Shown here piece after piece: positions 12,136-35,398 of a stretch of 64,000 nucleotides of DNA; the stretch's first letter is position 1, and each line of letters starts with the position of its first letter. The translations under genes and the position numbers were made by a program. The notes under the pieces are model-generated. The model made no database searches and was not told where the DNA came from. It saw only the letters and a list, made by a program, of their open reading frames with translations. The DNA is taken from positions 165,657 to 229,656 of IMG/VR virus record IMGVR_UViG_3300048672_001051. One strand, given 5' to 3'.

Positions 12136-12570
12136 TTAAAGCTCTCTTAATTTTAAATTAAAAACATCTTCGTCATTAACACTAAATCCGAGACTATGAG
12201 TACCATGGCAGGTACTGTCTGTACAGTAGTACTTATGATCATCTGACGAGATATGCAAACCTATTGTAAAATTATCAGATTTTATATAACTAGTTGTTAT
12301 AAGTTTTATCGGATCTATAATAGCACCTACTGGGTACTTATTATAAAATTTATCTAAGTCTGCGTACCAACTAAATATATCATATGCATATCTGACTACG
12401 CCCCAAAAAAAGACTGAATTTAGAGGTTTTTGAGTTGCAATAAAATCTAGCCTATTTACAATATCTATAAGTGTTGGTGAACACTCACCTTCAATACTTA
12501 TTTTCACTATCTCTAAAACTTCTTTGAAGTATTTAACAACCTCTAAACACTCTTTTAATTTCAAATCCAT
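12136..12570 (-). CDS. LRxL-array paralog
   Basis: FWGVVRY, CHG, LREL end. Confidence 0.8.
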   Translation of the reverse strand: MDLKLKECLEVVKYFKEVLEIVKISIEGECSPTLIDIVNRLDFIATQKPLNSVFFWGVVRYAYDIFSWYADLDKFYNKYPVGAIIDPIKLITTSYIKSDNFTIGLHISSDDHKYYCTDSTCHGTHSLGFSVNDEDVFNLKLREL

Positions 12571-12571
12571 A

Positions 12572-12964
12572 CTATAAATGCCTTAAATGCAGGTCAATCA
12601 TGTCGCCATTAATAATAAAATAACTTTTATCGAGAGTATTACTTTGTCCATGGCTTGTACCTTTAAAACGAAAGCTGTGAGTTTTAATCCAGCCGGCTGC
12701 TACACAATTACCTAGTCTTATACCTGAAGTTGTACAGTAAAATTTTCCAAAAAATTTATTTGGTACTTGGCTAAAACCTTCAGAATATTTTTTTAAATCT
12801 ACATTTTTCGTATGACAATTTTTTAAATAACGAGCTGCTTGCCAAAATACTTTAGCACTTCTTTCAATATTAATGACATTTAATAAAATTTTATAAGCTT
12901 CCTCATTTTCTTTTTTAAAGTCTGTTAAAACTTTAAAAATTTCTAACGCTTGAACTTCATTCAT
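12572..12964 (-). CDS. LRxL-array paralog
   Basis: FWQAARY, SHG, LRHL end. Confidence 0.8.
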   Translation of the reverse strand: MNEVQALEIFKVLTDFKKENEEAYKILLNVINIERSAKVFWQAARYLKNCHTKNVDLKKYSEGFSQVPNKFFGKFYCTTSGIRLGNCVAAGWIKTHSFRFKGTSHGQSNTLDKSYFIINGDMIDLHLRHL

Positions 12965-12966
12965 AT

Positions 12967-13347
12967 TTACAGATACCTGAGAGATTTGATACGATTAGGA
13001 ATACCGTTTAAATAATATTTTTTATCTATTTGGTCATAGCCGTGAAGCTCACCTTTAATATAAAAATATTCACGATTATCAAAAATAGCGCGACCAAATC
13101 TTTCGAGAGAGCTTGATAAATATCCTGGACGTCTAGACTCTGAATTAAATATAGGTCCAGCAGTGTATTCTTTTAAATCTATTTCATGTCCAGCACACGC
13201 TTTAAAAAATCTCAGTATCATCCAGTATTTTTTAAAATTGGCAGTTTTTAATGCCAATTTAAATTCGTCTTTTAGTTCACTGCCTAGCTTATGACGCGTG
13301 TCCGGAATAAGTTGAAAAATATGCTGTGCAAATAGTTCTTCTCTCAT
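12967..13347 (-). CDS. LRxL-array paralog
   Basis: YWMILRF, LHG, LRYL end. Confidence 0.8.
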   Translation of the reverse strand: MREELFAQHIFQLIPDTRHKLGSELKDEFKLALKTANFKKYWMILRFFKACAGHEIDLKEYTAGPIFNSESRRPGYLSSSLERFGRAIFDNREYFYIKGELHGYDQIDKKYYLNGIPNRIKSLRYL

Positions 13348-13799
13348 TATAACTCTCTTAGTCTTAAAGTATTTTTTAGTGCGCGATCATTTATATTGAA
13401 ACTAATACTATTATTAATACTGCAAGTCCCATGCTTCATATCTTTAAGTCTATAACTTGTACTCTCCAAGTAATAATCCAAACCTATTAGTTTAAAATCT
13501 GTTGTAAGATAACTTACAATTTTTAAATCTGTCGGTGATCTAGCCAAACCTGCAGGATATTTATTTAAAGTTTTGTCGAAATAATAAAAATAATTTGCCA
13601 AATTTAAATAGACATAACGGGTTATCTGCCAAAAACAAATAATACTTGGACTAGGAGATTTAAAAATGTAGTCTAAAATTTTACAAGCAAGCGATAATTC
13701 ATCAATATATTTTATACGAACATTTTTAAGCATTTCAGGCGTTTCTAAATATTCTTTAAAATATCTTAAGATTTTTTCAGAGTCTTCTAGTTGTGTCAT
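13347..13799 (-). CDS. LRxL-array paralog
   Basis: FWQITRY, KHG, LREL end. Confidence 0.8.
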   Translation of the reverse strand: MTQLEDSEKILRYFKEYLETPEMLKNVRIKYIDELSLACKILDYIFKSPSPSIICFWQITRYVYLNLANYFYYFDKTLNKYPAGLARSPTDLKIVSYLTTDFKLIGLDYYLESTSYRLKDMKHGTCSINNSISFNINDRALKNTLRLREL

Positions 13800-13801
13800 A
13801 A

Positions 13802-14179
13802 TTACAAATCTCTCAGTTTTAAATTAGAATTTAAAACACAATTATTTATTTTTAAAATAAATATTTTTGAAGCCTTATTAACATACACGCCGTGCATTCC
13901 ACCGTTATTTTGAAAAAATTTTAAATTAATATTGTCATATTCGCCGAAAGACCTGAGATAACTATTAAAATAATATTTTCGATTAGTGCCAGGCGATACA
14001 TACAAACCAGCTCTTGTTAGAAAATTTGGCCGTACTGGACGGCCAACATCATATTGTAATTCTCTTAAAACACCTAGGAATTTAGTTGTCTCACCGTCAG
14101 CTAACATTTTTAAACATAAAATATATGCATACGTATTTTTCGGAATATTTTGTAATAAATCTAAAAATAATATTTTCAT
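13802..14179 (-). CDS. LRxL-array paralog
   Basis: FLGVLR, MHG, LRDL end. Confidence 0.8.
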   Translation of the reverse strand: MKILFLDLLQNIPKNTYAYILCLKMLADGETTKFLGVLRELQYDVGRPVRPNFLTRAGLYVSPGTNRKYYFNSYLRSFGEYDNINLKFFQNNGGMHGVYVNKASKIFILKINNCVLNSNLKLRDL

Positions 14180-14586
14180 TATAAATGCCTTAATTCTCTA
14201 GTTTTTACATCACGGCTGTTAATAATAAAAATAAAGCCTCTCTCAATGTCAAAAACCCCATGTTTTCGACTTTGTTTGTAATGCCTTCTAGCTACACTAT
14301 TAAATTTAGCCATACCAATTACTTTGTCTTGTTTGTTTACATAATAATGATAATTACCTAATATTGATGTAGCTAAGCCTGAACGCATGTGGCCTATATC
14401 TACACCCGAAGGCTTTATAGCTTTATGGTAATTATAATGTCTAATAATCTCCCAAAATTTTTTAAAATTGTTAGTAGCAATTAAACTTTCTAATTTTCTA
14501 GTAGTTTTTTTGTCAATACTTGGTTGATTATACTCTTGTATAATTTTTAAAATTTCATAAGGATTTGTAGTAATCATTTGCCACAC
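14179..14586 (-). CDS. LRxL-array paralog
   Basis: FWEIIRH, KHG, LRHL end. Confidence 0.8.
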   Translation of the reverse strand: MWQMITTNPYEILKIIQEYNQPSIDKKTTRKLESLIATNNFKKFWEIIRHYNYHKAIKPSGVDIGHMRSGLATSILGNYHYYVNKQDKVIGMAKFNSVARRHYKQSRKHGVFDIERGFIFIINSRDVKTRELRHL

Positions 14587-14598
14587 CTTTGTTAATAT

Positions 14599-14985
14599 TT
14601 ATAAATACCTTAGATTTTTTTTGTAAAAAAAATCATTATTAATATACATGGTAGTAATATTATTCAGGAAAGCCATGCCGTGAAAATAATTATTTTTAAA
14701 AAATAAACATTCTTTATTAATACCAGTCTTGTGTAAACCTATTCTTAAGCCTAAGGAGTTAATATAAAAACTTTCATTGCCTGAGTTTAGGCTAACAAAA
14801 CCGCTTGCCTTACTTCCTAGCGGTATTTTTAAATCATAATTTTGATTAACATACCGACATACTTCCCAAAATTTTTTAGTATTATTTTGATAAATCAATT
14901 GTGATAGTATTGCAGGGTAATCTTTTAAAGTAATATACTTTTTTGTATATTTTTCAACTTCTTTTATAATTTCTAAGGGTTGCAT
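14599..14985 (-). CDS. LRxL-array paralog
   Basis: FWEVCRY, FHG, LRYL end; start placed at MQPLE. Confidence 0.8.
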   Translation of the reverse strand: MQPLEIIKEVEKYTKKYITLKDYPAILSQLIYQNNTKKFWEVCRYVNQNYDLKIPLGSKASGFVSLNSGNESFYINSLGLRIGLHKTGINKECLFFKNNYFHGMAFLNNITTMYINNDFFYKKNLRYL

Positions 14986-14987
14986 TT

Positions 14988-15383
14988 CTAGAGATTCCTT
15001 AAAGACTTTGTTGGGCATTCAGAATTATTAATATAATTTTGAAAATAAGAATTCACAGTACGAACTCCGTGTAATTTTCTATTTTTAAAAAATAATTTTG
15101 CTTTATGATGGATTGATAAACCCACCACCTTACCTTTACTATTTAAATAGTAACTACTAGATAAGTTATGCATACAAGCTAAGCCCACTAAACGTGGGCC
15201 TGTAATATATTTTAAATCAAATTCATTTTTTAAATATCTGTACAGTTCCCAAAATTCTTTAACATTTTTAGTAGTACTTAAAAGATTGTAAACATAATGA
15301 TTACAGTCAGCAGGATCTTTTAAAATTAATTTTAAAAGATCATATATTTCAATAATTTCGTGTTGTTCAATTGTCTTAGTCAC
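14988..15383 (-). CDS. LRxL-array paralog
   Basis: FWELYRY, LHG, LRNL end. Confidence 0.8.
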   Translation of the reverse strand: MTKTIEQHEIIEIYDLLKLILKDPADCNHYVYNLLSTTKNVKEFWELYRYLKNEFDLKYITGPRLVGLACMHNLSSSYYLNSKGKVVGLSIHHKAKLFFKNRKLHGVRTVNSYFQNYINNSECPTKSLRNL

Positions 15384-15752
15384 TTATAAATACCTTAAGC
15401 TCCGCCATGTCAGTAAATTGCCTTTAAGCCAGAATTTATGAAATCTATCATCGCAACCATGCCTATAGCCTTGACAATAAAAAACTCTATCTCGAGAGTT
15501 TCTTGCAAATCCAAATTCTCTAGCTTCTCTATTAATATAACTTAAAAAATTAGAATTAGAGTTATAAATTTTACCAGCAGTATACTCACCTAAAATTAAA
15601 TTAAACTTTTCTGTTTTTTTAATTCTACGAGCTACACTCCAAAATTCTTTAAAATTTTGGTTAAGAAGACATTCTTGCAAAAGTCTAGTGTCAATATGGT
15701 AACTAAATCTTAAGTGGTCTAAAACATTTTTAGCTGATTCTAATTCAGTCAT
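15384..15752 (-). CDS. LRxL-array paralog
   Basis: FWSVARR, RHG, LRYL end. Confidence 0.8.
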   Translation of the reverse strand: MTELESAKNVLDHLRFSYHIDTRLLQECLLNQNFKEFWSVARRIKKTEKFNLILGEYTAGKIYNSNSNFLSYINREAREFGFARNSRDRVFYCQGYRHGCDDRFHKFWLKGNLLTWRSLRYL

Positions 15753-15753
15753 A

Positions 15754-16230
15754 TCATAAATACCTTAGCCTAGTCACATTACTTCGTATTCCATCAATAT
15801 AAAAATCAGGTGCATTGAATCTTTTATATGCGCCATGTCTAATATTATTTTTAAAATAACATGATTCATTATCAGACCTTTGACACAGACCTATCATGCC
15901 ACTATTTTTTAATTTATAATAAAAATTATTATAACGCATAAACTTACCATTAAAATAATGTTGTAAGTTTATTTCAGGGCAATAAGAAGTACTAATATAT
16001 TTTATTTTAGGCCAAAAATTTTTGGTATTATTGTCTGATAGAGCATTTTTAAAAAGTCGCAAAATATCTACAGACTTTAAAGATCTTTGATAAACAGTTC
16101 TAACTATATCTTCACGAGTGTGACACTTTTTTAAAATTTCTTTTGTATTACAAGGATTGTAAAAAAAAGGAAAAGGACTTGGTGACAATATGGTTGAATA
16201 AGCCATAGACGTAATATCTGTAGGGTACAT
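15754..16230 (-). CDS. LRxL-array paralog
   Basis: FWPKIKY, RHG, YIDG, LRYL end. Confidence 0.8.
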   Translation of the reverse strand: MYPTDITSMAYSTILSPSPFPFFYNPCNTKEILKKCHTREDIVRTVYQRSLKSVDILRLFKNALSDNNTKNFWPKIKYISTSYCPEINLQHYFNGKFMRYNNFYYKLKNSGMIGLCQRSDNESCYFKNNIRHGAYKRFNAPDFYIDGIRSNVTRLRYL

Positions 16231-17154: not shown

Positions 17155-20100
17155 TTACATACCTAAACTTTTCATTAGTGCATCTAAGTCATCTGGCGGA
17201 ACGTTACCATTTGAATTAGCGCCTTCTTGAATGTTAAGGTCACTAAACTCTTCAGGATCTGCACAGAAAGCCTCAAATTTCTGACGGATCTCGAAAAGTT
17301 TTGAAACAAGTGAACCGAAATATGTGTTTTCAGAAATGAATGTCTCCCACATTTTCAATTCACTTTCGTCTACCGGAATTCGACCCTTATTGTATAAAGA
17401 GATAAAATTCCGACAACCTTTTAAAGCCTTCGAATGAGAACCCCAAGTGATAATAAACAAAAGTTTATTAATATCACCAAGGGTCATCCGATATTCAGGT
17501 TTTTGCAATTCAGCAATAATAATCTTACGATTTTCAGGCAATGCCATATTGCGCAGAAAGAACATTTCAAAGTCCTTACTACCATTTTTGGCATGCTTAA
17601 TTGCTTCAATAACTTTTTCCTGAACCAAACGAGTATAAGCAAAAGAGAATTGTTTAAATTCTAAATCGCTAAGGGGCTGCAATAAAACAGGGTTAGGGAC
17701 ATTAGCAGTTTTGTATAAACCTTTATTTGCGACAAAGAATGCTTGATAACACTGCATTAAAGCAGTAGCAGTCCAAATGTCTAGGGTGGCAGGGCCAATA
17801 TTAGCTTTAGCAACAGAGGCATTAAGCAAATACTGTTGATAGCATGGAATGCCATTTTGAGGTGCCATTGGAACTTTGTTCAGTTTATAAACATGTTGAC
17901 CAATAGGTAACAACTTGTTAGTTGTTTCATACTCACCATCAATATACTCTTCATTCCAACATAATTCTTGCTCAAGAGGTTGAGGCCGAACAAATCGACG
18001 AAGAATTTCTTGACCAATTGGATTAGGAATAGCTAATGGTAGAGCATCACCATCACAATCACTTCGTGCTTCCAAAGCAATAGTAGGGCTGATTAACAGA
18101 ATGTCACTATTGTACCGAGGATTCAAATACGCGTGCAAATCAATATTATGCACTGTCTTCAAATACATTCGGAACAAGTTAACATCCCAAATACGAGGTA
18201 CTTGTAGCTGCATTTCCCAAAGTACAGGATTACGCACTGCTAAGCTACGAGGAACTTCGTTTAAAGCACGATCTACAGCTTGTTTGTCTAAAGTGCCATG
18301 CTCATTTAAACGCGCTAAGATGTCAATCTGAGAACTAACAAGACGTTCCCAATCATCACCAAAGGCTTCATTCGAGATACGTTCAAATTTAGACTGACTC
18401 ATAACAACAACAACATCAGGTGGTAGATAATGATCAACTACCTGTTTCATACCAAAGCCTTTCATACGAGGCTTGATAAGATGTTGAATTACCATTTGAG
18501 CGGCTTCTTCGTCTGAATAAAGCGTCGATTTAACTGCACGCAAATACTCGTCTAAAGCATAAGACTGTTGTCGATTGTTGTCAGGCATTAACATGTTTCG
18601 GAAAACTTTATTATACCCTTTCAGGTATTTATAGTTTTCACGAACAAGTCGCAAAATCTTAGACAATCGAATTAAAATGTCTGGATAATTTGTTTCGCCA
18701 CTCATAAGTCGACCAGTAAACCGGTTCAACAAATAAGCACTAGGCATCCGGACACAAGGGCCGCCGAGAGAGCTGAAATCCAAATAAAAACCATTCGGAT
18801 TATATTCAGCATTTAACAAGCGAGAATTAGATGGAAAAATTGCCTTCTTTGTTAATACAAAGTCGTCAGGTCCATACATAGGATTCTTACTAATTAAATC
18901 GGCAGGGGTGATAATTGGAAGTTCATCAACTTCTGAAAATACAGCGCGATCATCTGTTAGAATTTTAAACAATTCATAAACAGCTTTAATAGAATCAGGA
19001 TCACGATAACTTTCAAAAATATGATTTGCAAGTTCAAGCGATACGCCACCTTGGAATGTTAACATCTTCAAGGTTTCAAACATTACAGATTGAGGTTTCC
19101 AATCTGCGTAGATGTCAGTAATTTCAGTGTAGTTGATATAGACAAGTCCAATCTCAACGTTAACTTCATTACCAAAATTATCTACATATTTGTATTCAGG
19201 CAAAGACTGAGACGCAGCATTAATTTCAGCTTCATCCAATGAATTTAAATAGCCTGAATTACCACGTTTAACACTGGGTTTATAGTAGCCCAGCTTAACA
19301 GCTAGAGCAGCTCGTGCTAAAACAATGGTGTTTGATGCAGCTTTAACAGCATTCATACCAGTAACAATGTCCGGTACGAGAAAATCTTTTTCATTCCAAG
19401 TGTTATCTGTCGAGGAATCTCCAAGATATTCAGAAGCATTTGGATAACGTTCAGCAATAGCAGAGTCATCAAAAACATTCTTAAACATAATCTTACCAGT
19501 ATTGGTAAGAACTTTAGTAACACCTTTAAGTCCGGTGCTACTTGTGATACGGCAGTTACCTGCACGGCAAATACCTTTAAAACGAATTTTAAAAGAATTT
19601 GCAATGCTTGTCGCATCAATAGAAAGTACAGTAATGGTTTTAAAATTGTACAAGTCGATAGGACTTGACAAGTTATTCAACCCAACTGTAAATGTTTTAA
19701 AAGAAGGCTGATAAGTCTTGCCAGCTTCTACTAAAACTTCAGAAAAAATTTCTTCAATACTGAAAGAAACTTCTAAAGCTTGAGCTGCAATAGTTGCTGC
19801 AATTTCAATTTCACCGGAAACAAAACGTTTAGTGTCTGGGTCCATTGGATGAAATACAATAAAAGCTTCACGTTGGCAATCGTCTTTACGAGTAAAGACG
19901 TCACCATTAATGATATAATCCTGTGTAAAAACAGAATTACTAGGGTTTTCAATCTTTAGATGCTCTCCTAAAGAATGAGTTTTAAGACGAGCAGCTAACG
20001 ACTGTTTATTATCGAAAATAGTCAAGATCGAAGGAACTGTATCTCGAAGATTTTCAGAATAACCTGTGTTGCGAAACATAAAAGGCTGTTCACCTGTAAA

Positions 20101-20778
20101 CAGGCTAACAGTAGCAGTTTTAGACATACTACCTTCAGATGTCAGATGAATCTGACAATCACGGATAATATTTGGCCAATCTTTTTCACGAGGTTGTGAA
20201 TTAGAAATAATTTGGCCAAGAACAAACTTACCATTATTGATTTTGTCCAGATGTTGATTAAAACTAAGAATAACAAAAGAATGTTCAGATTTTTTCTGAG
20301 CATTAAAACTTACAGGCTTGGTATAATTTGCAAAAGACTGCAAATTATTAATATCAGTGTTTAACAAACCTGTATAGATGTCTTTGCTGTACTGTTGATA
20401 CATATTAAGACGATCTACTAAAATAAGATAAAATACTTGATTTTGATTAAGAATCAAATAATTATGATGACCAAAATAATCAATTCGACTATTAGAAGTC
20501 GAGCTGACTTCTACGAGAAAAGGATAATACGTTGTCTGCACTGGTGCAGTGCTAGGTGAAAACAATGTTTTACGAATAATAACTTCCATTGCATGAGTAT
20601 CACTGCGAGGGAAAGCTATAATAACATCATCATCAGCATTAATAGAATAATTGCACAGCCCACTGTAACCTTGAGGCAGGTGTCCAATAAGTTCTTCAGC
20701 TGTGCAATTTGCCGGAATATCACGAAAGGCTTGTGTGCGTACAATACCATCCAAACGTGCAATCGGAAATGAAGACAT
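17155..20778 (-). CDS. Single-chain two-barrel DNA-directed RNA polymerase 2 (putative)
   Basis: 1207 aa. RSDCDGD, AVRNPVL (beta'-like RxP), GNCRITSSTGLKGV (resembles beta GDKxxxRHGxKGV), KANIG and LVQEKVIEAIKH. Confidence 0.8.
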   Translation of the reverse strand: MSSFPIARLDGIVRTQAFRDIPANCTAEELIGHLPQGYSGLCNYSINADDDVIIAFPRSDTHAMEVIIRKTLFSPSTAPVQTTYYPFLVEVSSTSNSRIDYFGHHNYLILNQNQVFYLILVDRLNMYQQYSKDIYTGLLNTDINNLQSFANYTKPVSFNAQKKSEHSFVILSFNQHLDKINNGKFVLGQIISNSQPREKDWPNIIRDCQIHLTSEGSMSKTATVSLFTGEQPFMFRNTGYSENLRDTVPSILTIFDNKQSLAARLKTHSLGEHLKIENPSNSVFTQDYIINGDVFTRKDDCQREAFIVFHPMDPDTKRFVSGEIEIAATIAAQALEVSFSIEEIFSEVLVEAGKTYQPSFKTFTVGLNNLSSPIDLYNFKTITVLSIDATSIANSFKIRFKGICRAGNCRITSSTGLKGVTKVLTNTGKIMFKNVFDDSAIAERYPNASEYLGDSSTDNTWNEKDFLVPDIVTGMNAVKAASNTIVLARAALAVKLGYYKPSVKRGNSGYLNSLDEAEINAASQSLPEYKYVDNFGNEVNVEIGLVYINYTEITDIYADWKPQSVMFETLKMLTFQGGVSLELANHIFESYRDPDSIKAVYELFKILTDDRAVFSEVDELPIITPADLISKNPMYGPDDFVLTKKAIFPSNSRLLNAEYNPNGFYLDFSSLGGPCVRMPSAYLLNRFTGRLMSGETNYPDILIRLSKILRLVRENYKYLKGYNKVFRNMLMPDNNRQQSYALDEYLRAVKSTLYSDEEAAQMVIQHLIKPRMKGFGMKQVVDHYLPPDVVVVMSQSKFERISNEAFGDDWERLVSSQIDILARLNEHGTLDKQAVDRALNEVPRSLAVRNPVLWEMQLQVPRIWDVNLFRMYLKTVHNIDLHAYLNPRYNSDILLISPTIALEARSDCDGDALPLAIPNPIGQEILRRFVRPQPLEQELCWNEEYIDGEYETTNKLLPIGQHVYKLNKVPMAPQNGIPCYQQYLLNASVAKANIGPATLDIWTATALMQCYQAFFVANKGLYKTANVPNPVLLQPLSDLEFKQFSFAYTRLVQEKVIEAIKHAKNGSKDFEMFFLRNMALPENRKIIIAELQKPEYRMTLGDINKLLFIITWGSHSKALKGCRNFISLYNKGRIPVDESELKMWETFISENTYFGSLVSKLFEIRQKFEAFCADPEEFSDLNIQEGANSNGNVPPDDLDALMKSLGM

Positions 20779-22954: not shown

Positions 22955-24433
22955 TTACATACGCTGATTGACATCATCTTCGAGTGAATCAACAACGACT
23001 TCAACATCTGGTTTAGCTGAATTTGTAACTGCCGATTCAGTTGTATCAGAATCGGTAGTGTCCAAATTCAACATATCCAAAAATTGTTCGCCAAGATTAT
23101 CAATTGAAGTGTCAGATACTGCTTCAATAGGTACAGTTTCAGCAAAATTCGGTACAATATCAACTGTACTATTCGGGCGATTTGGATCGTTATGCCCTTG
23201 ATAAGAGAAATTACCACCAAATACAAAAGTACATGCATTAATACGCATGCCTTGAGCATCTTTGTGATAAATCAAGGACAAAGAAGCATTGACGATTAAA
23301 ATCAATCCCGAATTTTTTTGGATATAATTTGACATGATTTGACCACGCAAATTATTGTTGAAAGCATCTTCCATTGAGATAATAATATCTCGTTTGAGCG
23401 AACGATTAAGGAAATCGTAAGCTTGACACATAGCCGTAAAACGTTGACGGCCAGTGGTGGAAGTTTCGGATGAACTAACACTATCAATATCGCCAGTCAA
23501 AACACTTGCAGCACTTTGTTCGGCGCTCATAGCAGGTGTGCGCTGAGTTTGACGGCTAGTGATAGGGCCATAACCAAAAGTAGCATCAGTCAAAGGATCT
23601 TGACTGATTGATGGGTTAGGCAAAACAAAACCATGAAACTTATTGATAATCGGGGCAAAAGTTGCCTGACTATTTTCGTTCGACAAGATTTTTTCAGCAT
23701 TGAAATCAGCACTAGCAGATGAACTGTTTTGTGCAAGACCGATAATTGGCTGAATACCGCTTGGACGGGCAATAAGAATATGGCTCGACACCAGCTTACC
23801 AGCTTCAATTAAAGCTTGTTCAGAGTCATTATAACGCTTGAAAATTTCAGCTAATGACCGAGCTTTCATTTCGGCAGTAATACCAGTACGCTCTAGAAGT
23901 TTAAGAAGACCGGCATAGGCAATCATAGTGTGCTTATTATCTTCAACACTATCCCAATTAGTCGAAGATACTGGAATATAATCTTCGGCAATAGCGGCAT
24001 CAATAATTAAAGCATTATATGCCGAGTGTTGTTTAGTAACTGAGTCGAGACTTAAAAAACGACTCATAATTTGATAATTTGAGTCTTCGAAAAAAATGGA
24101 AGGTTTACCATTTTGTTGACTGACATATGAACCAGAGTCCATAGTGTGAGACAAAGCAATCGGTTGATACATACGATTACTATATGTTGAACGCGGCGTA
24201 TGCATATTCAACATAACAATTTGGTGTAAAGACACATTACCTGTAGGTGAAATAACCAAATACAGGCGACGAATTTGATTGGTACGATTTTCAAAAAGAC
24301 AAATAGTACCATTCATTGAACGTTCTGCGTTACTGGTAGGTTTACCATAACGAGTTTGAGGATTGAAATTGGGTGGCAATTTCAATGTTGGGAAGGATGA
24401 CTTAGCAACAGGGGCTGCGACAGGTGGTAACAT
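22955..24433 (-). CDS. Hypothetical protein with acidic C-terminal tail
   Basis: Long ORF; start placed at MLPPV after GAGG (ORF extends to 24520); D/E/S/T-rich tail. Confidence 0.75.
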   Translation of the reverse strand: MLPPVAAPVAKSSFPTLKLPPNFNPQTRYGKPTSNAERSMNGTICLFENRTNQIRRLYLVISPTGNVSLHQIVMLNMHTPRSTYSNRMYQPIALSHTMDSGSYVSQQNGKPSIFFEDSNYQIMSRFLSLDSVTKQHSAYNALIIDAAIAEDYIPVSSTNWDSVEDNKHTMIAYAGLLKLLERTGITAEMKARSLAEIFKRYNDSEQALIEAGKLVSSHILIARPSGIQPIIGLAQNSSSASADFNAEKILSNENSQATFAPIINKFHGFVLPNPSISQDPLTDATFGYGPITSRQTQRTPAMSAEQSAASVLTGDIDSVSSSETSTTGRQRFTAMCQAYDFLNRSLKRDIIISMEDAFNNNLRGQIMSNYIQKNSGLILIVNASLSLIYHKDAQGMRINACTFVFGGNFSYQGHNDPNRPNSTVDIVPNFAETVPIEAVSDTSIDNLGEQFLDMLNLDTTDSDTTESAVTNSAKPDVEVVVDSLEDDVNQRM

Positions 24434-28648: not shown

Positions 28649-29038
28649 TTAGAGTTCATTAGCCATAAGAACTAATAAACGTCTAAAATGAACAGAACCT
28701 TTATTTAAATAAGTTAATAATATAGTATAAGATTCATTAAGTAAACGTAATACAAGATCATCTCCAATATTATAAATATTAGATACAATAGTCATATTAC
28801 TATAGTCACGAGACAACATAATAATGAATGGTTTCTTATCAGAAGTCTGATATAACAAATATGTATATTTATCAGTGTTGAATGTATACAAACCAAACGG
28901 TAATTGATAAATATCTGCATCAGTAAAAATACGATTCAGATTTAAATTCCATTCAGTTTTGTACAAAATTTTGGCAGCCAAACTCACATTATGAAGAAAT
29001 GCAATTCTAGCTACAGCAGGCACCATTAAAGTAGCCAT
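28649..29038 (-). CDS. Hypothetical protein
   Basis: AGGAG SD; downstream of a promoter-like motif. Confidence 0.65.
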   Translation of the reverse strand: MATLMVPAVARIAFLHNVSLAAKILYKTEWNLNLNRIFTDADIYQLPFGLYTFNTDKYTYLLYQTSDKKPFIIMLSRDYSNMTIVSNIYNIGDDLVLRLLNESYTILLTYLNKGSVHFRRLLVLMANEL

Positions 29039-29078
29039 AATATAAACACTCCTAAAACATGGTATAGATTACATGAAA

Positions 29079-29092
29079 GACCATTTTGCTTT
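29079..29092 (-). promoter_or_regulatory. Phage promoter-like motif
   Basis: AAAGCAAAATGGTC. Confidence 0.65.
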
Positions 29093-29180
29093 ATAGGTAT
29101 TTACTATATAGAGAATAGATACCAATAAAACACAATAAACTATATCAGAATAACTCTGATATATAAAAAGCATAAACAAA

Positions 29181-29210
29181 TCAGGCACTTAGCTTTAAAA
29201 CCAAATACCT
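29181..29210. repeat. 26-bp direct repeat copy 2, overlapping an IHF-like site
   Basis: AATCAGGCACTTA fits WATCARnnnnTTR. Confidence 0.7.
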
Positions 29211-29223
29211 GATACAAGTTATA

Positions 29224-29529
29224 TCAACGTTTAACAGCTTCTGACATAACAACAGGATTAGAACGCATAGCAAGTACAGTCTGATCATTAGGTATAAAAA
29301 CATACCCAATAAGATTAATAACAAATGATACACAAGCAATCTTGAATGATAACAATAACTTATCAAGAGTACCATTAGCTTCAGCTTCAATCATTTCTTT
29401 AGAATCAAGAAACATATAGAAGAGAAACATAAGTATCATAGCAATAACAGTAAGAGTCAGTAAGACAGCAAACATCCAACTCAATGATTCAAACACATCA
29501 ATCATATAAGCAGTAAACAATAGGTCCAT
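29224..29529 (-). CDS. Membrane protein
   Basis: Two hydrophobic segments. Confidence 0.65.
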   Translation of the reverse strand: MDLLFTAYMIDVFESLSWMFAVLLTLTVIAMILMFLFYMFLDSKEMIEAEANGTLDKLLLSFKIACVSFVINLIGYVFIPNDQTVLAMRSNPVVMSEAVKR

Positions 29530-29634
29530 AACAAAATACCCCTATGGTAATAACAACAAAGGAAAGGCTCTAATAACAAAACTGTTAACAGAGCCATACT
29601 GATAATCAATAACAATACATTAAGAAACAATACT

Positions 29635-30198
29635 TTAAATACTAAACTCAGTGTTGATAAGCTTTACAGCTTGCTCAAGCATTGGTTGAATATTCAAGAC
29701 AGTTTCAACAGCGAGATTATTATCAAAAGATACTCTCACAACGCCATAGCCGTCTTTGCATAATTTAAATATTAAATAAGTACCATACTTATTAGCAGTA
29801 TGATACGAAACACTATTAGGCATTTTGTTACCAGAAGAAAATGTCATATAAAAATTTAATATATGACCATAGTCATTAAGTTCAAAAAGTGCAAAAGCAT
29901 CATCGGTACTGTAACGAATAGCTTTACCAGCTAGCTTAAAATTATCGCCACAAGAGATAGCTCTATTTTTAAGCCAATCGTAATTGCCACGGCAAATAGC
30001 CATAAAGGTATCATAATCTTTTGCTTTATAAGCAGTTTCAGCTGGCAAGTAATTACATGCACAAGCTTCAGACATCTTTGCTCGTTTCAAAATACGTTTA
30101 CAGACTTTGTCTAATTCCAAATCAGACTTAGGATCAATAGAATCATCAGTATTCATAGCAATAACTCCTTGTTCAATAGTGAGTAGGTTATAGTTCAA
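29635..30198 (-). CDS. Hypothetical protein
   Basis: Probable start MNTDD after AAGGAG. Confidence 0.65.
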   Translation of the reverse strand: MNYNLLTIEQGVIAMNTDDSIDPKSDLELDKVCKRILKRAKMSEACACNYLPAETAYKAKDYDTFMAICRGNYDWLKNRAISCGDNFKLAGKAIRYSTDDAFALFELNDYGHILNFYMTFSSGNKMPNSVSYHTANKYGTYLIFKLCKDGYGVVRVSFDNNLAVETVLNIQPMLEQAVKLINTEFSI

Positions 30199-30472
30199 TA
30201 GTATCTTTCAAAGTGTAGACAAATTCTACAACTTTGAACGTAAGACTTGTATCTGAGAATTCTTCATCAGACCAATATTGACCAGCATTGAGGTCTTTAC
30301 AAATCTCATCGAGATATTCTTTAGAACTTGCCAAGCAGCTCGATGTGATACGTTCTGTTGGCTTTGGTATGCTATACCGATCAATAGATACAGCAATAGA
30401 GCCATCAGTAGATACGATGGCGTAGAGTGGTAGGGTTTGCATGTTACAGTACCTTCTGTTGTAAATACACAT
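30188..30472 (-). CDS. Hypothetical protein
   Basis: ORF in operon. Confidence 0.6.
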   Translation of the reverse strand: MCIYNRRYCNMQTLPLYAIVSTDGSIAVSIDRYSIPKPTERITSSCLASSKEYLDEICKDLNAGQYWSDEEFSDTSLTFKVVEFVYTLKDTIEL

Positions 30473-30502
30473 ATAGGAACCATATAGATTCCTATAAGTT
30501 TA

Positions 30503-31237
30503 TCAACGATGAGTGATTTTTGAATCTTTCAAAGCCTTCTGAATTTCAGGCTTAACGATCATTTGTCGTAACCAATCTTCAACTGGTATCCAACCATCAG
30601 ATGTTTGGCGTACAGTTTGACTGTATGGTTCTACATAGCTTAACAAATAAACCATGAGTAATTGATAGAATTCTAAATCGAATTCATCACCAATATATTC
30701 ATATTGGTAAGCTTTATCACTGTGAGCTATTAATAGCTCACCAATGCTCTCGGGAAGCTTTAGACTTACTGAGAATTCATTGCAAGCAAGAATCTCCAGA
30801 TGAGTCTTATTGCGTAGTGCCAGAAGTTTTTCTGGCAACTCTTCGCCGTTGTCGAGAGAGTCTACTGAGTTAGTTATAGAACTCTTTTTTGAGTGAGTTA
30901 TAGAACTCTTTGAGTGAGTTAAAGAACTCTTTGAGTGAGTTACTTTCTTACTAAACTTCCATTTAAGATAATCCATTGGCCGAGGACAAGACATTTTCCT
31001 ATCCAAGGCTAGATCTGTGATACTGTATTCTTCAACTGTGCTAATAGTTTCAAACTTATTAGCCAGTTTTATAGCATCTTCGAGTTGATGGTATGCAGTA
31101 CTAGACTGCACACCATTAGTCAGAAGATACTTAACTAGGTATCTTTCTACCATAGTCATTTTGCTCCAAGAACAGTTTAAGATCATTAAGCACTTTTTTC
31201 CTATCAGGAAGTCCCAAATTAAATATTGGAATATCAT
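30503..31237 (-). CDS. Hypothetical protein with internal THSKSS repeats
   Basis: About 21-nt tandem repeat at ~30866-30943; probable start MTMVER. Confidence 0.65.
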   Translation of the reverse strand: MIFQYLIWDFLIGKKCLMILNCSWSKMTMVERYLVKYLLTNGVQSSTAYHQLEDAIKLANKFETISTVEEYSITDLALDRKMSCPRPMDYLKWKFSKKVTHSKSSLTHSKSSITHSKKSSITNSVDSLDNGEELPEKLLALRNKTHLEILACNEFSVSLKLPESIGELLIAHSDKAYQYEYIGDEFDLEFYQLLMVYLLSYVEPYSQTVRQTSDGWIPVEDWLRQMIVKPEIQKALKDSKITHR

Positions 31238-31736
31238 GAGCTTGCGCTAGCAATAGTGCAGTTTTAGTGCCACCTTGAATGTTACCATTAGGTGTCCATG
31301 TGCATACAGCATCGACAGGATTATCTAGGTTATAACCTAGAATCTGATGACAGTTGCGAGAATGCATACCGCGAGCATATTCATTGCAACGGCTCCAGTG
31401 ACGTTCGCCTAGCAGTTGTTCAGTTAATGCTTCAGTCTCTTTAATTAAATTAGGATTACGAATAATCGCTAAATGTTTATTTGGTAGTGGACTGTAGTCA
31501 ATTTCTTTTTGATCTGCTACATATACTTCAAAATGATCAGTTGTTACTAAACCTTCTGATAAAGCTTTGCTGTACATTTTTTGAGCAATGCCATCCATTC
31601 CGTCTTTACAAAGACCGCTAACGAATGTAATACCTAGTTCTGCTAAACGATAGCAGAGCTTCTGACATATTAGAATGTCTTTATGATACTGAGATTGTCT
31701 CTCAAGGTCTCTTGAACCTATCAATGCTATTCGCAT
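31131..31736 (-). CDS. SLOG/DprA-like nucleotide-binding protein
   Basis: RIALIGSR, VSGLCKDGMD, RNCHQILG, GGTKTA, IPIFNL. Confidence 0.75.
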   Translation of the reverse strand: MRIALIGSRDLERQSQYHKDILICQKLCYRLAELGITFVSGLCKDGMDGIAQKMYSKALSEGLVTTDHFEVYVADQKEIDYSPLPNKHLAIIRNPNLIKETEALTEQLLGERHWSRCNEYARGMHSRNCHQILGYNLDNPVDAVCTWTPNGNIQGGTKTALLLAQAHDIPIFNLGLPDRKKVLNDLKLFLEQNDYGRKIPS

Positions 31737-31769
31737 AATAACCTGCTCCTAAAGGGTTATATGAAGCCC

Positions 31770-32177
31770 TTAGTGGGCTTCTTTGAGGTGATTGAATACC
31801 TTCTTGTTGTACTCATGAAAATCAGAGTACTTAGAAAGTAATACATACTTTATATGACGCCATGAGACCATAGTCTCAGCTTCATAGTTGTATGGTTCTA
31901 CAGGCCACATGTCTGCGATATGAGGTCCATAGATAAAGCAATGACAAGGTACACCATTTTCATCAAATGTGATAACACTTTCATGTTCAACATCTGATAA
32001 GTCTACGCCAGTTTCTTCGAGGACTTCTCGTACTAATGCAGTACGAAGATTAGTATCGTCTTCGTCGACTTTGCCGCCGATAAGTCCGAATGAGTTGTTG
32101 GAATGCTTACGAGTGATCGTAAGAACTTCTCCAGCTTCATTCTGAACCCACAGTACTACGCATTCAGGTTTGGACAT
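31770..32177 (-). CDS. Nudix hydrolase
   Basis: GGKVD...ALVREVLEETG Nudix box. Confidence 0.9.
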   Translation of the reverse strand: MSKPECVVLWVQNEAGEVLTITRKHSNNSFGLIGGKVDEDDTNLRTALVREVLEETGVDLSDVEHESVITFDENGVPCHCFIYGPHIADMWPVEPYNYEAETMVSWRHIKYVLLSKYSDFHEYNKKVFNHLKEAH

Positions 32178-32240
32178 GTTATGTCTCCCTATTGTTTAAG
32201 TATTCAAGAGATGCTCACGCATCTCTTGAAACAAGTCAGC

Positions 32241-33254
32241 TTAATCTTCAGAAGGTTCTTCTACAACCTTAGGAAGTTTATCGAACAAGCGTTTAGGAAT
32301 CTTGCTCAATACGCCGTTGATCATTTCTGGAATTTGCATTGTCTGTAGTATTTCACCATACGCTACTGTTAACATAGCGTTACTTACAACTTTAGCGCGA
32401 GGGTCGTCGCTCACTACCGTTACGATTGCACTAGCGCTTGTAGCGATAGCTAGATCAGCAAATGGTGTACTTAACAGTACTTTAGCCATTGGCGGTACGT
32501 AAGGCTTTAGCTGTTCTTTGATCAGCTCAATTGCCATGCGACCAATTTCTAGTTTAGAGGCAAGAATCATTGCTTGAGCATGTTCTTGCGCTTGGTCGGT
32601 GATTACTTCTTTACCAGCTTCGGTTAAAGATTTTTTAGGAGCGGCCATGGTTGTTTCCTCTGTATCAGTGGTTGGTTGTGTTACGGTTGATATACTACTT
32701 GGAATCCAGCTGAAGAACTCTTCAGCCCATTCAGAAGCAGTTTCGTGGTCGTATACGCTGGGTTGAAAACTGTCATCTTGGTGCACCAAAGTTTCAATAC
32801 CGGCATAAGGTTCTTGCCAAGGTTTTAAATCTCCGGCAAATGATGCAAATAGCATATAAAAGAACTGGTCTCTTTTAGCTAAATAATTGATATCAAATAC
32901 ACCTCCACCTAGTTTTGAAGTAACTTCAAGTAAGTCCAAAAATTGCTTTTGCAAATGTTGCTCGACAATATTGTCTGCAGGGCAAGTAAGCCACAGCATA
33001 CCTTTGTATCGTCTCACATTTTGCCACTTACTTAAGAACAGTCTAGATGTTTCCGATGGGTTGGCATTTTCTCTTAAAAATGCTAACACATTTTCAACAT
33101 CTTTAAATGACTGTTTGTTTTTGGTCCAGTCGATAGTTGAAGTAGTAATATTTATCACTATTTCAATAAGTCTTTCGACTGCTTCTCCAAAATCGTTATC
33201 ATTCTCATATTGGCTTTGGTACATAGCCTCACTGAGAAATTCACTAATATCCAT
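32241..33254 (-). CDS. Hypothetical protein (possible internal start at 32648)
   Basis: 337-aa ORF; internal GAGG-ATG. Confidence 0.7.
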   Translation of the reverse strand: MDISEFLSEAMYQSQYENDNDFGEAVERLIEIVINITTSTIDWTKNKQSFKDVENVLAFLRENANPSETSRLFLSKWQNVRRYKGMLWLTCPADNIVEQHLQKQFLDLLEVTSKLGGGVFDINYLAKRDQFFYMLFASFAGDLKPWQEPYAGIETLVHQDDSFQPSVYDHETASEWAEEFFSWIPSSISTVTQPTTDTEETTMAAPKKSLTEAGKEVITDQAQEHAQAMILASKLEIGRMAIELIKEQLKPYVPPMAKVLLSTPFADLAIATSASAIVTVVSDDPRAKVVSNAMLTVAYGEILQTMQIPEMINGVLSKIPKRLFDKLPKVVEEPSED

Positions 33255-33266
33255 AAGGTTTAACCC

Positions 33267-33713
33267 TCATAAAGGTTTTAGATGGTATACATGCACATTG
33301 TCAGGCAATGGTACAAGCATAGGCATAATTTCAGCTACCGTTCTCTTACCATTGTTGATGGCAGGGAAGGGCAATCCGAATATCTTGTTAGGATATTTCC
33401 TAGCAAGTTTGTTAAGGATATCGCATGATTTTTGAACAACCTCCAGAGGTGATGGATCAGCGTAGTGAATCTTAGTTTGGAAGGCAATATACTTACCAAC
33501 TGCAACTAAGTTATATACACCCATACGCTTACCTTTATTAGTGATTAGTTCACCAAACAGTTTAGCAATGTTGGGTATTTTTTTCTGAGCTTGGTCAGCG
33601 TTACCTGCACCCATAACCAATTCTCCGTTTTTCTTAACAACAGAGTTGGTAGTGATACAAATATAGTCTAGCTGCTCGTGATCAAGCCAGATGTTTCGTT
33701 GTTTCAATAGCAT
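33267..33713 (-). CDS. Macro domain (ADP-ribose binding/hydrolase)-like protein
   Basis: CITTNS...LVMGAGNA...FQTK...LPFPAINNG. Confidence 0.7.
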   Translation of the reverse strand: MLLKQRNIWLDHEQLDYICITTNSVVKKNGELVMGAGNADQAQKKIPNIAKLFGELITNKGKRMGVYNLVAVGKYIAFQTKIHYADPSPLEVVQKSCDILNKLARKYPNKIFGLPFPAINNGKRTVAEIMPMLVPLPDNVHVYHLKPL

Positions 33714-33729
33714 ACAATATCTCCTGTTT

Positions 33730-34390
33730 AGGTTGCATTAGACTGAGTATTACTCTATAATGAATTTATCAGTAGGGCATACACACCTGTATGTATACCA
33801 AACTTATTGATAGAAACCCTTCTTGATTAGGGTAGTCTAAATAAAAGGTCAAGCTAGGTGAGGAACGTGCTCACCACCTAATAGTGCTGGCAATGTCGAG
33901 ACTGACAACCAGCGACGTGATTCACTCTATGAGTGTCATGGGCTTATCAACCACTTGCTGAAGAATATCCATACCAACCGTATTCAGCATCTTATAAGAG
34001 ATATAAGAACTACCTATTGTAGAGGTACAATAGGTTTTAGTGTCAATCAGGCTAATTAAGTGATTGAGGATATACTGTACTAAGGACAAGTCAGTTCCCA
34101 TAAGGGAGAGTTAAAACTCTATAATAAAGTAATTAACCACTACTTATATAAGCATTGTTGGGCTTACCGTGCTTGTAATATATCGTTATGGTAAGATATA
34201 TAACAAGGTAGTTATTATAACATCTATTAATATAATAACTATATAGACTATCTGTATTAACATAACTATTGATTAGTTTGTTAAGCTACAGGTATCTATC
34301 ACGGATATAGAGTCTTTAGTCACGTCTGGACTTTATGTTGGCATACATATAGAGACCATTTAGATCTCTATAAGTCTAACAACTAGCTGT
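33730..34390. ncRNA. Candidate large structured non-coding RNA
   Basis: About 660 bp with no ORF of 60 aa or more and more than 10 consecutive hairpins. Confidence 0.4.
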
Positions 34391-34391
34391 A

Positions 34392-34811
34392 TTAAATTAC
34401 AGACAATGCGTCTTGAATAATAGCTAAGACTTTTTTAACTGCAGTCTGACCATTATTCAATATTTCAATCCAACCGTCACCTAGGTCAACAATAGCTGGA
34501 ACCATATCGAATGAAATATTATAGCGAATGGTTGTAGCTACCAATACTTTTGGCGTATCTTCGTTTGGAGTGTAGCGTTCGCTAATAACGAATCCCGTGC
34601 GCTCAGAGTCTTTGAAGAGCACGAGGGTACGATTGTTCACCTCGCCTGTGTTAAGGCCGTAGAGGCCCGCTGGAAGCTCTTTAATGGCATCATCTGCAAG
34701 CATTGCATCGTAGTAGCCACCACGGCGATTCCAATCAGGATTGAAGGTCAGTTGTGGCAATGTTTTTGCCCAAGCTTTGAAGTCTTCGTAACGTTGATTT
34801 TGCATGATCAA
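34392..34811 (-). CDS. Hypothetical protein
   Basis: ORF with AAGG SD. Confidence 0.65.
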   Translation of the reverse strand: MIMQNQRYEDFKAWAKTLPQLTFNPDWNRRGGYYDAMLADDAIKELPAGLYGLNTGEVNNRTLVLFKDSERTGFVISERYTPNEDTPKVLVATTIRYNISFDMVPAIVDLGDGWIEILNNGQTAVKKVLAIIQDALSVI

Positions 34812-34834
34812 TACCTTTCAGAAAGAGGTTGATG

Positions 34835-35398
34835 TTAAACTTTGAATTCACGAAACGTAATGCTAAGACGATCTTTAACATTAAGTTTGTAACCTATACT
34901 GTGCATGTATACACTTTGACAGCCGCCTGCCATTATGAATACATCACCATGTTTCAATTCTACACTGTCAGTTATAGGTGGTGGATAAATACCGCCTTTA
35001 ACAATCTCGTGGAAGTTGAATATACAACTTTCGCCTAACGATACAGATACAACTGCACTGCCTTTAACGAGAGTCGATTCTGAGTCTGAATGTGCGTTGA
35101 TACCGCTACGCTTACCAGCAGGATACCAATTCAATAAAGCACTATTGAAATTAGTACCAAGCATGGCATTTATTCGCTTCATAAGTAATTCAAGTGGCGG
35201 ATAAACAGACCAAGGGTAAGCTTTAGTTACTTGGCCAGAATACGGATAATCTACGCCAAGACTGCAGATACGACGTTCAGAGTTTTTAAAAGGAACCCAA
35301 GGGATCTTTTTAATAATCTGTTCGAGATGTCTGTCAGAATTTTGTATCACTACATCTGTTAAAAATCTTGAATCAGGAGATTTTTTTAACATGGTCAT
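34835..35398 (-). CDS. AlkB-family 2OG-Fe(II) oxygenase
   Basis: FNSALLNWY, HSD, VSVSLG, LKHGDVFIM, HSI, RLSITFR. Confidence 0.9.
   Translation of the reverse strand: MTMLKKSPDSRFLTDVVIQNSDRHLEQIIKKIPWVPFKNSERRICSLGVDYPYSGQVTKAYPWSVYPPLELLMKRINAMLGTNFNSALLNWYPAGKRSGINAHSDSESTLVKGSAVVSVSLGESCIFNFHEIVKGGIYPPPITDSVELKHGDVFIMAGGCQSVYMHSIGYKLNVKDRLSITFREFKV

What the first reader, a model, noticed from the sequence alone, without database searches (positions are those of the whole stretch)
33730..34390. About 650-nt ORF-free stretch packed with hairpins: candidate large ncRNA
In an otherwise dense genome this gap has back-to-back stems, for example TTAGACT/AGTCTAA, TAGGTG/CACCTA, GCTGG/CCAGC, TGCTGAA/TTCAGCA, ACCTATTGTA/TACAATAGGT, TCAATCA/TGATTGA, TAGTTATTATA/TATAATAACTA and TATAGAGA/TCTCTATA. 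A hexamer-less variant of the promoter motif (minus strand AGATCTAAATGGTCT, ~34353-34367) sits at its upstream end. It matches no RNA class I recognise.
Basis: partly seen in the sequence, partly recalled or inferred. Interest (0 to 1): 0.65.

Follow-up and report, generated by a model that had tools for sequence, protein, structure and literature searches.

The report
Conserved hairpin-rich non-coding block in jumbo phage
A 678-base gene-free stretch in a 230-kb freshwater phage is full of hairpins and is the best-conserved stretch of the 24 kb shared with a related phage, so it is very likely a functional non-coding element, probably a large structured RNA of no known family, but nothing yet shows that it is transcribed.

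Summary
The gap is real. It spans 33714-34391, 678 nt, between two minus-strand genes. It has stops of all three kinds in most frames and no small ORF with a ribosome-binding site.

It holds 7 perfect local stems against 1.3 in shuffles. The fold z-score is -6 to -9, but coding windows of this phage score as low as -10.8, so fold energy does not set the gap apart. Conservation does. Against the only long relative, a 25.5-kb wastewater contig, the block 33731-34389 is 97-99% identical. The rest of the shared 24 kb is typically 65-85% identical. Short contigs from three other samples show the same pattern.

More distant relatives of either flanking gene have no gap, so the element belongs to one narrow lineage. 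Rfam finds nothing, although the same scan finds a group I intron elsewhere in this genome.

No RNA data exist, there is no compensatory covariation, and the strand is undecided.

Best reading: a lineage-specific, selectively kept non-coding element, most likely a large structured RNA (confidence 0.45). Rivals are a DNA-level site, a recombination-spread module, and a small-peptide or antisense locus.

The parts
33714..34391 (.). ORF-free intergenic stretch, 678 nt
   Evidence: Stops in all six frames, and no ORF with a Shine-Dalgarno motif.
33731..34389 (.). Conserved block with sharp edges
   Evidence: Identity to L002 in 60-nt bins is 0.92-1.00 inside the block. It is 0.58-0.65 just upstream (34390-34510) and about 0.80 just downstream.
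33805..34270 (.). Ultra-conserved core: 4 substitutions in 466 nt against L002
   Evidence: The X5 contigs are more than 99% identical here, and the X9 contig about 91% over 33800-34122.
34373..34383 (-). 5' terminal arm (GTTGT + TAGACT) that pairs with 33732-33744
   Evidence: Minus-strand MFE and two-sequence consensus fold. In L002 one G-C pair becomes G-U.
33732..33744 (-). 3' terminal arm (AGTCTA + GCAAC) that pairs with 34373-34383 and closes the whole block
34348..34372 (.). First hairpin: 8 perfect pairs, 10 with one G-U on the minus strand. Its loop and 3' arm hold AAATGGTCT (34353-34361)
34150..34300 (.). AT-rich segment (22-30% GC) with three hairpins, including the 11-bp perfect stem at 34209-34241 and a weak 15-nt repeat of 2.9 copies
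34012..34035 (.). 10-bp perfect hairpin with a 4-nt loop. On the plus strand it is followed by TTTT, so it looks like a terminator there
33922..34101 (-). 59-aa ORF, probably not a gene
   Evidence: No Shine-Dalgarno motif and no Pfam family. Its only relative is the L002 copy. The X9 contig has 1-nt indels inside it.
34186..34263 (-). 25-aa very hydrophobic ORF, relevant only to the small-toxin rival
   Evidence: It has no Shine-Dalgarno motif, lies in AT-rich DNA, and one X5 contig has a 1-nt deletion at 34227.
33733..33761 (+). Sigma-70-like TTGCAT, 17-nt spacer, TATAAT, pointing into the block
   Evidence: Read. Both hexamers are unchanged in L002, while 7 substitutions lie around and between them. 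This could be chance.
34392..34811 (-). Upstream gene, 139 aa, no known family
33267..33713 (-). Downstream gene, 148 aa, in the PHROG 'phosphatase' family (phrog_335; one phage record calls its homologue 'Macro domain-like protein')

Best explanation
The block 33731-34389 is a discrete non-coding element that selection has kept in one narrow lineage of freshwater and wastewater jumbo phages. Its most likely product is a large RNA of up to about 650 nt that folds into some twenty hairpins, with its two ends paired.

Shown:
- It does not code for protein.
- It holds far more local stems than chance gives.
- It is the slowest-evolving stretch of the shared region.
- Its edges coincide with the edges of the intergenic space.
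- It is absent from more distant relatives.
- It matches no Rfam family.

Inferred:
- It is transcribed. Every long ORF from 248 to 59247 lies on the minus strand, so transcription through the region would make the minus-strand RNA, which could then be cut out of the operon transcript. A plus-strand RNA from the sigma-70-like promoter at 33733-33761 is the alternative.
- The fold is the functional form.
- It may act in the RNA-repair and ADP-ribose-processing setting of its neighbours (AlkB-like oxygenase, 'phosphatase'-family protein, NUDIX), for example as a scaffold or decoy. This last step is speculation.
For: Non-coding.

Stems: 7 perfect local stems against 1.29 in shuffles, 0 of 500 shuffles reaching 7. 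Fold z is -8.9 on the minus strand and -6.2 on the plus strand.

Conservation against L002: 200-nt identity is 0.98-0.99 at 33800-34300, the maximum over 24 kb, where the typical value is 0.65-0.85 and other gaps score 0.72-0.84. The codons next to the block have high synonymous divergence: 23 of 50 conserved codons at the start of the downstream gene differ synonymously.

Conservation in other samples:
- X3: element 97-99% identical, upstream gene 87-92%.
- X5: more than 99%.
- X9: about 91% in the core, with flanks too diverged to be laid.
The element stays better conserved than the flanks, and in X9 it is itself clearly diverged.

Substitution placement: only 4 or 5 of the 21 differing columns fall in consensus pairs, and all of those keep pairing. 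Real substitutions keep the MFE better than randomly placed ones (p about 0.01 on plus, 0.125 on minus).

Not a pseudogene: no residual similarity to the genes that sit in this slot in distant relatives.
Against: - No expression evidence. No holder is on record as RNA, and the one 'RNA-Seq' run laid is flagged as probably DNA.
- No compensatory pair.
- A consensus fold avoids incompatible columns by construction. On the window's own MFE, 7 substitutions break pairs on each strand.
- The stems are mostly perfect Watson-Crick, shared by both strands, with arbitrary loops. I saw no GNRA or other tertiary-motif loops on reading the fold, which is less like the ornate RNAs.
- Hairpin richness and very negative z-scores are genome-wide.
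- Both flanking genes contain patches of low synonymous divergence. Recent recombination therefore happens here and could explain part of the identity.
Confidence: 0.45

Rival explanations
1. It is a DNA-level cis element such as a replication origin with an AT-rich unwinding region, or a site for packaging, recombination or protein binding. The palindromes would act as DNA.
For: - Most stems are perfect palindromes that read the same on both strands.
- A segment of 22-27% GC lies at 34150-34300.
- A weak 15-nt repeat of 2.9 copies lies in it.
- The substitution tests do not prefer one strand.
Against: - There are no DnaA boxes in the block.
- No motif recurs across the hairpins; each stem has its own sequence.
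- GC skew shows no turn here. The skew minimum and the strand switch lie at 58-59 kb.
- Near-uniform 99% conservation over 466 nt is more than a set of binding sites needs.
- Nested long-range pairings do nothing in duplex DNA.
Confidence: 0.15
2. It is a module spread by recent recombination: a mosaic patch or an ORF-less selfish element. Its near-identity would reflect recent shared ancestry, not selection.
For: - It is absent at the equivalent position in all more distant relatives of either flanking gene.
- Its termini are complementary, like inverted repeats.
- Patches of low synonymous divergence in both flanking genes show that recombination tracts exist here.
- The region differs in gene content between the two phages.
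Against: - It is single-copy in the genome.
- In the two long records that hold it, it sits in the same place.
- I saw no target-site duplication on reading the two junctions.
- Divergence is graded inside the block: 5-6% in the 5' part, 0.9% in the core, 11% in the 3' part.
- Other samples show a range of divergence, from under 1% to about 9%, which fits vertical descent under constraint.
- A patch whose two ends both fall on the intergenic borders is unlikely by chance.
Confidence: 0.15
3. It is a small-gene locus. Either it is a type I toxin-antitoxin-like pair (a structured mRNA for a tiny hydrophobic peptide plus an antisense RNA), or the 59-aa ORF is a real small protein.
For: - A 25-aa very hydrophobic ORF lies at 34186-34263 on the minus strand, and a 59-aa ORF at 33922-34101.
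- The 5' and 3' ends are predicted to fold back on each other.
- A possible plus-strand promoter faces the minus-strand genes.
- High nucleotide conservation is expected where constraints overlap.
- The module is present in some relatives and absent in others.
Against: - Neither ORF has a Shine-Dalgarno motif, while 23 of 38 sampled genes of this phage do.
- Hydrophobic peptides are what AT-rich DNA encodes by chance.
- The X5 contig has a 1-nt deletion inside the 25-aa ORF, and the X9 contig has uncompensated 1-nt indels inside the 59-aa ORF.
- There is no family or relative for the 59-aa product beyond L002.
- The block is longer than typical type I loci (my own knowledge).
Confidence: 0.1
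4. It is a long structured leader or processing region of the downstream 'phosphatase'-family gene, or of the operon: RNase sites and stabilising or regulatory hairpins rather than a stand-alone RNA.
For: - It lies between co-oriented genes with no convincing promoter or intrinsic terminator on the minus strand.
- It runs up to the ribosome-binding site of the downstream gene.
Against: - Homologues of the downstream gene in other phages do without it.
- 650 nt and some twenty hairpins are far more than known leaders need (my own knowledge).
- The part next to the ribosome-binding site is the least conserved part of the block.
Confidence: 0.1

Closest known systems
ROOL RNA (Rfam RF03087)
   Same: Both are large structured non-coding units, several hundred nucleotides long, of unknown function. 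ROOL is encoded in phages and prophages (PMC12286853).
   Different: There is no match to the Rfam model at gathering score, nor at E up to 10. The block is not near the phage's tRNA island, which lies 51-69 kb away. On reading the fold I saw no pseudoknots or tertiary-motif loops. It is confined to one narrow phage lineage.
GOLLD RNA (Rfam RF01998)
   Same: GOLLD is phage-borne, very large and was found in lake and marine metagenomes (PMC12286853). The window's phage also comes from a freshwater metagenome.
   Different: There is no match to the model and no adjacent tRNA. GOLLD has a universally conserved 3' region, whereas here the 3' part is the least conserved.
Long non-coding RNAs of Staphylococcus phage K (Kayvirus)
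   Same: They are abundant phage transcripts from ORF-free regions, with unknown function (PMC9241854).
   Different: Those are defined by RNA-seq and lie next to tRNA genes. This block has no expression data. I made no sequence comparison with them.
Group I intron (Rfam RF00028)
   Same: Both are structured, ORF-less RNA elements of a few hundred nucleotides in phage genomes, present in some relatives and absent in others.
   Different: There is no match, although the same scan finds a true group I intron elsewhere in this genome (genome 72,491-72,837). The block lies between two complete genes, not inside one.
hok/sok-type (type I) toxin-antitoxin loci
   Same: Both have a predicted 5'-3' fold-back, tiny ORFs only, possible antisense transcription, strong nucleotide conservation, and a present-or-absent distribution.
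   Different: The peptide ORFs have no ribosome-binding site and are interrupted in some sampled contigs. The block is longer than such loci. No Rfam match of any kind was found.

Membership tests
ROOL (RF03087) | Match to the family covariance model | tested here: not met
   cmscan of the window at gathering score gave 0 hits. cmscan of 33500-34600 at E up to 10 gave four chance-level hits to other families only.
ROOL / GOLLD | Usual position next to a tRNA island in a phage or prophage (typical, not strictly defining) | tested here: not met
   The 15 tRNAs lie at genome 131,161-147,961 and the block at 199,370-200,047. There is no tRNA in the window.
GOLLD (RF01998) | Match to the family covariance model, with a conserved 3' domain | tested here: not met
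   (the L002 copy was also scanned). The 3' part of the block is its most variable part.
OLE RNA | Match to the family covariance model | tested here: not met
   No Rfam family of any kind reached its threshold in the window.
Group I intron (RF00028) | Catalytic core matching the model | tested here: not met
   No hit in the block. A positive control exists in the same genome, scoring 62.8 bits.
Group I intron (RF00028) | Interrupts a host gene whose exons join to a full-length product | tested here: not met
   Both flanking ORFs are full length compared with their homologues: 148 aa against about 150 aa, and 139 aa against 137 aa.
Structured ncRNA (generic) | Compensatory base-pair changes across relatives | tested here: inconclusive
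   Only two full-length sequences with 21 differing columns. Of 207 predicted pairs, 0 have both sides changed and 4 have one-sided G-U changes. The same picture appears on the other strand.
Structured ncRNA (generic) | A discrete transcript | not testable with these tools
   No holder is on record as RNA. Contigs cannot show ends or strand.
Type I toxin-antitoxin | A translated small hydrophobic toxin ORF conserved among copies | tested here: inconclusive
   The 25-aa hydrophobic ORF is identical in L002. It lacks a Shine-Dalgarno motif and carries a 1-nt deletion in one X5 contig.
Replication origin | Initiator boxes or iterons next to an AT-rich unwinding element, at a skew inflection | tested here: not met
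   An AT-rich segment is present. There are no DnaA boxes, only a weak 15-nt repeat, and no skew turn at this place. Phage-specific initiator sites cannot be excluded.

The most novel reading that the evidence does not exclude
The block encodes a new class of large (about 650 nt) phage non-coding RNA, unrelated in sequence to ROOL, GOLLD or OLE. It would be kept almost unchanged in a lineage of freshwater and wastewater jumbo phages, and would work together with the neighbouring RNA-repair and ADP-ribose-processing genes, for example as a scaffold, cage or decoy against a host defence.
Probability: 0.3. Interest if true: 0.7.

Novelty: new variant of a known kind. Interest (0 to 1): 0.5.

Why it matters
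Large structured RNAs of phages such as ROOL and GOLLD are few, and their function is still unknown. Each new and unrelated class gives another handle on what such RNAs do. This one sits among repair and anti-defence-type genes instead of beside tRNAs, which would point to a different role. It is also a useful caution: in this genome a very negative fold z-score is common even inside genes, so conservation, not fold energy, is what singles the block out.

Tried and rejected
Searches for more copies that found nothing:
- blastn of 33000-35200 against the phage collection.
- Exact hairpin patterns in viral contigs. One found nothing and the other gave three chance palindromes.
- The central 180 nt, back-translated as six peptide patterns, in metagenome, genome and viral contigs.
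- Single-protein scans of viral contigs with both flanking genes.
- The word search with the 59-aa ORF, which returned only the L002 copy.

Gene context:
- Four distant relatives of the downstream gene and three of the upstream gene have no gap at this position.

Ideas tested and dropped:
- Pseudogene: tblastn with the genes that occupy this slot in relatives found nothing.
- Recoded gene: five of the six frames carry all three stop kinds, and the sixth carries TAA and TGA.
- TTATAGAG as a genome-wide promoter word: 3 of its 12 copies lie in the block, and the rest are scattered inside genes.
- Strand assignment from G-U pairs and from the placement of substitutions: symmetric or contradictory.
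- Fold z-score as a discriminator: coding windows score as low.
- Function of the upstream 139-aa protein: no family and a poor Atlas model.

The second metagenome scan was not used, because the first had already probed the 99%-conserved core with six patterns.

Full report
**Setting**

The window is the last 64 kb of a 229,656-bp IMG/VR virus record, estimated 98% complete. It is a jumbo phage from a freshwater metagenome. It carries 15 tRNA genes far from the finding. Its nearest cultured relative, Acinetobacter phage vB_AbaM_ME3, is distant, at about 31% identity over a 1207-aa protein. Every ORF of 110 aa or more between 248 and 59247 that is not nested in a longer one lies on the minus strand.

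**The observation**

The gap runs from 33714 to 34391, 678 nt. It lies between a 139-aa ORF with no known family (34392-34811) and a 148-aa ORF of the PHROG 'phosphatase' family phrog_335 (33267-33713). One phage record calls its homologue of the 148-aa protein 'Macro domain-like protein'.

Five of the six frames carry all three stop kinds; the sixth carries TAA and TGA only. The longest ORF is 59 aa. No ORF of 10 aa or more on either strand has a Shine-Dalgarno motif, whereas 23 of 38 sampled genes of this phage have one.

Seven are local hairpins. TTAGACT/AGTCTAA joins the two ends of the block across 639 nt.

**Is it more than chance?**

Against shuffles of itself, yes. The gap has 7 perfect local stems of 7 bp or more, against 1.29 +/- 1.16 in shuffles, with 0 of 500 shuffles reaching 7. 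The MFE z-score is -8.9 on the minus strand and -6.2 on the plus strand with 120 shuffles.

Against the rest of this genome, only moderately.
- The genome holds 967 such stems against about 430 expected, and 227 stems of 9 bp or more against about 31.
- Coding windows of the same length reach z = -10.8.
- Other gaps reach z = -12.
- The gap ranks in the 95th-97th percentile for hairpin count, and in the lowest 3.5% of windows for GC-corrected local fold energy.

**What does single the block out: conservation**

A word search with the upstream protein found one relative. It lies on a 25.5-kb contig from a wastewater run (L002, habitat). The same gap is there, 679 nt long.

Aligned, the block 33731-34389 is 92-100% identical in 60-nt bins. 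Identity drops to 58-65% immediately upstream and to about 80% downstream. In 200-nt windows over the 24 kb that the two phages share, identity is typically 0.65-0.85. Two other intergenic gaps score 0.72-0.84. The block, at 0.98-0.99, is the maximum.

Inside the block the divergence is graded:
- 5' part: 5-6%
- core, 33805-34270: 0.9%
- 3' part: 11%

Synonymous divergence is high in the codons that abut the block: 23 of 50 conserved codons at the start of the downstream gene differ synonymously.

Short contigs from other runs agree.
- X3 (freshwater): 97-99% in the block, 87-92% in the upstream gene.
- X5: more than 99%.
- X9 (wastewater): about 91% over 33800-34122, with flanks too diverged to be laid.

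The block therefore does evolve, but it stays better conserved than its flanks in each sample. That fits long-term constraint better than a single recent transfer.

The caveat is that both flanking genes contain patches of low synonymous divergence: codons 1-60 of the upstream gene and codons 61-100 of the downstream gene. Recombination tracts therefore exist in this region.

**Distribution**

Parts of the block occur in runs of 12 studies, all freshwater or wastewater except one run with a coded organism name.

It is single-copy in the genome. It is absent from four more distant relatives of the downstream gene, at 55-63% protein identity, where another gene abuts directly. It is also absent downstream of three remote homologues of the upstream gene. 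It shows no residual similarity to the genes that fill this slot elsewhere. It is thus a gain of one narrow lineage, and it is not tied to either neighbouring gene family.

**Known families**

Rfam 15 gives no hit in the window at gathering score, and only chance-level hits at E up to 10 in 33500-34600. The L002 copy gives none either. The same scan finds a true group I intron elsewhere in this genome (genome 72,491-72,837, 62.8 bits), so the negative result carries weight for that family. No ROOL or GOLLD is found anywhere in the genome. ROOL and GOLLD are phage RNAs that often lie near tRNA islands (PMC12286853). This block lies 51-69 kb from the tRNAs.

**RNA or DNA, and which strand?**

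The two-sequence consensus fold has 207 pairs. Of the 21 differing columns, 4 fall in pairs, and all 4 are one-sided G-U changes. None is compensatory. The plus strand gives the mirror result, 5 of 21. On the window's own MFE, 7 substitutions break pairs on either strand.

Real substitutions keep the MFE better than randomly placed ones of the same kind: p is about 0.01 on the plus strand and 0.125 on the minus strand. The fold z-score prefers the minus strand. The strand is therefore undecided.

Two further hints point in different directions.
- Minus strand: transcription through the region would make this strand, because all the surrounding genes are on it.
- Plus strand: a sigma-70-like TTGCAT, 17-nt spacer, TATAAT lies at 33733-33761 and points into the block. 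Both hexamers are intact while 7 substitutions lie around them. By my estimate this has roughly a one-in-seven chance of arising by itself. A terminator-like hairpin at 34012-34035 followed by TTTT would give a plus-strand RNA of about 270 nt (fold z -3.7).

No run gives usable RNA evidence.

**The 'promoter variant'**

A real motif exists: AAAGCAAAATGGTCT followed by N-TTATGAGG-like sequence. It lies on the minus strand at eight sites between 29 and 51 kb, most of them upstream of genes. The site in the block shares only AAATGGTCT with it, and that 9-mer there forms the loop and 3' arm of the first hairpin. The same 9-mer occurs at four other non-motif places in the genome. I do not count it as a promoter.

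**Weighing the readings**

A functional non-coding element of some kind is very likely; I put it at about 0.8 (RNA product, leader and DNA-site readings together). Junk between two genes would not be the best-conserved stretch of the region in several independent samples, with edges that fall on the intergenic borders.

I give 0.45 to an RNA product of its own. In favour are the nested long-range helices, which mean nothing in duplex DNA, the 466-nt core with no repeated binding motif, and the absence of origin features. Against are the plain perfect stems with arbitrary loops, and the lack of covariation and expression data.

The rivals are:
- a DNA-level site (0.15)
- a module spread by recombination, with no function for the phage (0.15)
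- a small-peptide or antisense locus (0.10)
- a long leader or processing region (0.10)

**Novelty**

If it is an RNA, it is a new class within the known kind 'large structured phage RNAs of unknown function'. The claim cannot be raised further without transcripts and more diverged copies.

Noticed in passing
window minus strand; the AAATGGTCT core of each copy starts at 29086, 39624, 43200, 45638, 48031, 49023, 50378 and 50549: An eight-copy motif, AAAGCAAAATGGTCT followed by N-TTATGAGG-like sequence. Most copies lie upstream of genes, and some are preceded by runs of AAAGC repeats (clearest at 50549). It is a candidate phage-specific promoter of the 29-51 kb region. One copy is also conserved in L002 (L002 15582-15614).
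   Followed up: partly
window 2426-16230: About 38 co-oriented, tightly packed ORFs of 117-161 aa in DNA of 26-29% GC. Six that were sampled have no PHROG hit. Two that were compared are barely similar (E 0.024). This may be a very diverged tandem paralogue array.
   Followed up: partly
outside the window: genome 72,491-72,837, minus strand (L019:13091-13437): A group I catalytic intron (Rfam RF00028, 62.8 bits against a gathering score of 50).
   Followed up: no
window 58377-58830 and 59267-59856: Two ORF-free gaps at the minus-to-plus strand switch and the GC-skew minimum, with fold z of -5.6 to -12.5. The first holds two 14-bp GC-rich perfect hairpins. They are candidates for bidirectional terminators, divergent promoters or an origin.
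   Followed up: partly
whole genome; for example window 23000-23658 and 19500-20158: Coding regions fold far better than their shuffles (z -10.8 and -9.7). The genome has about seven times the expected number of perfect hairpins of 9 bp or more (227 against about 31). The cause is unknown.
   Followed up: partly
window about 28900-33260: About 4.4 kb that has no counterpart in L002. It holds the NUDIX gene, the DUF7566 gene and others. The neighbourhood is an accessory island of AlkB-like oxygenase, 'phosphatase'-family and NUDIX genes. Distant relatives carry RNA ligase, polynucleotide kinase and ADP-ribosylglycohydrolase genes at the same place.
   Followed up: partly
window 34385-34485: The last 100 nt or so of the 139-aa gene are replaced by unrelated sequence of the same length in L002, while the first 60 codons are almost identical, even at synonymous sites. 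This is fine-scale mosaicism right beside the block.
   Followed up: partly
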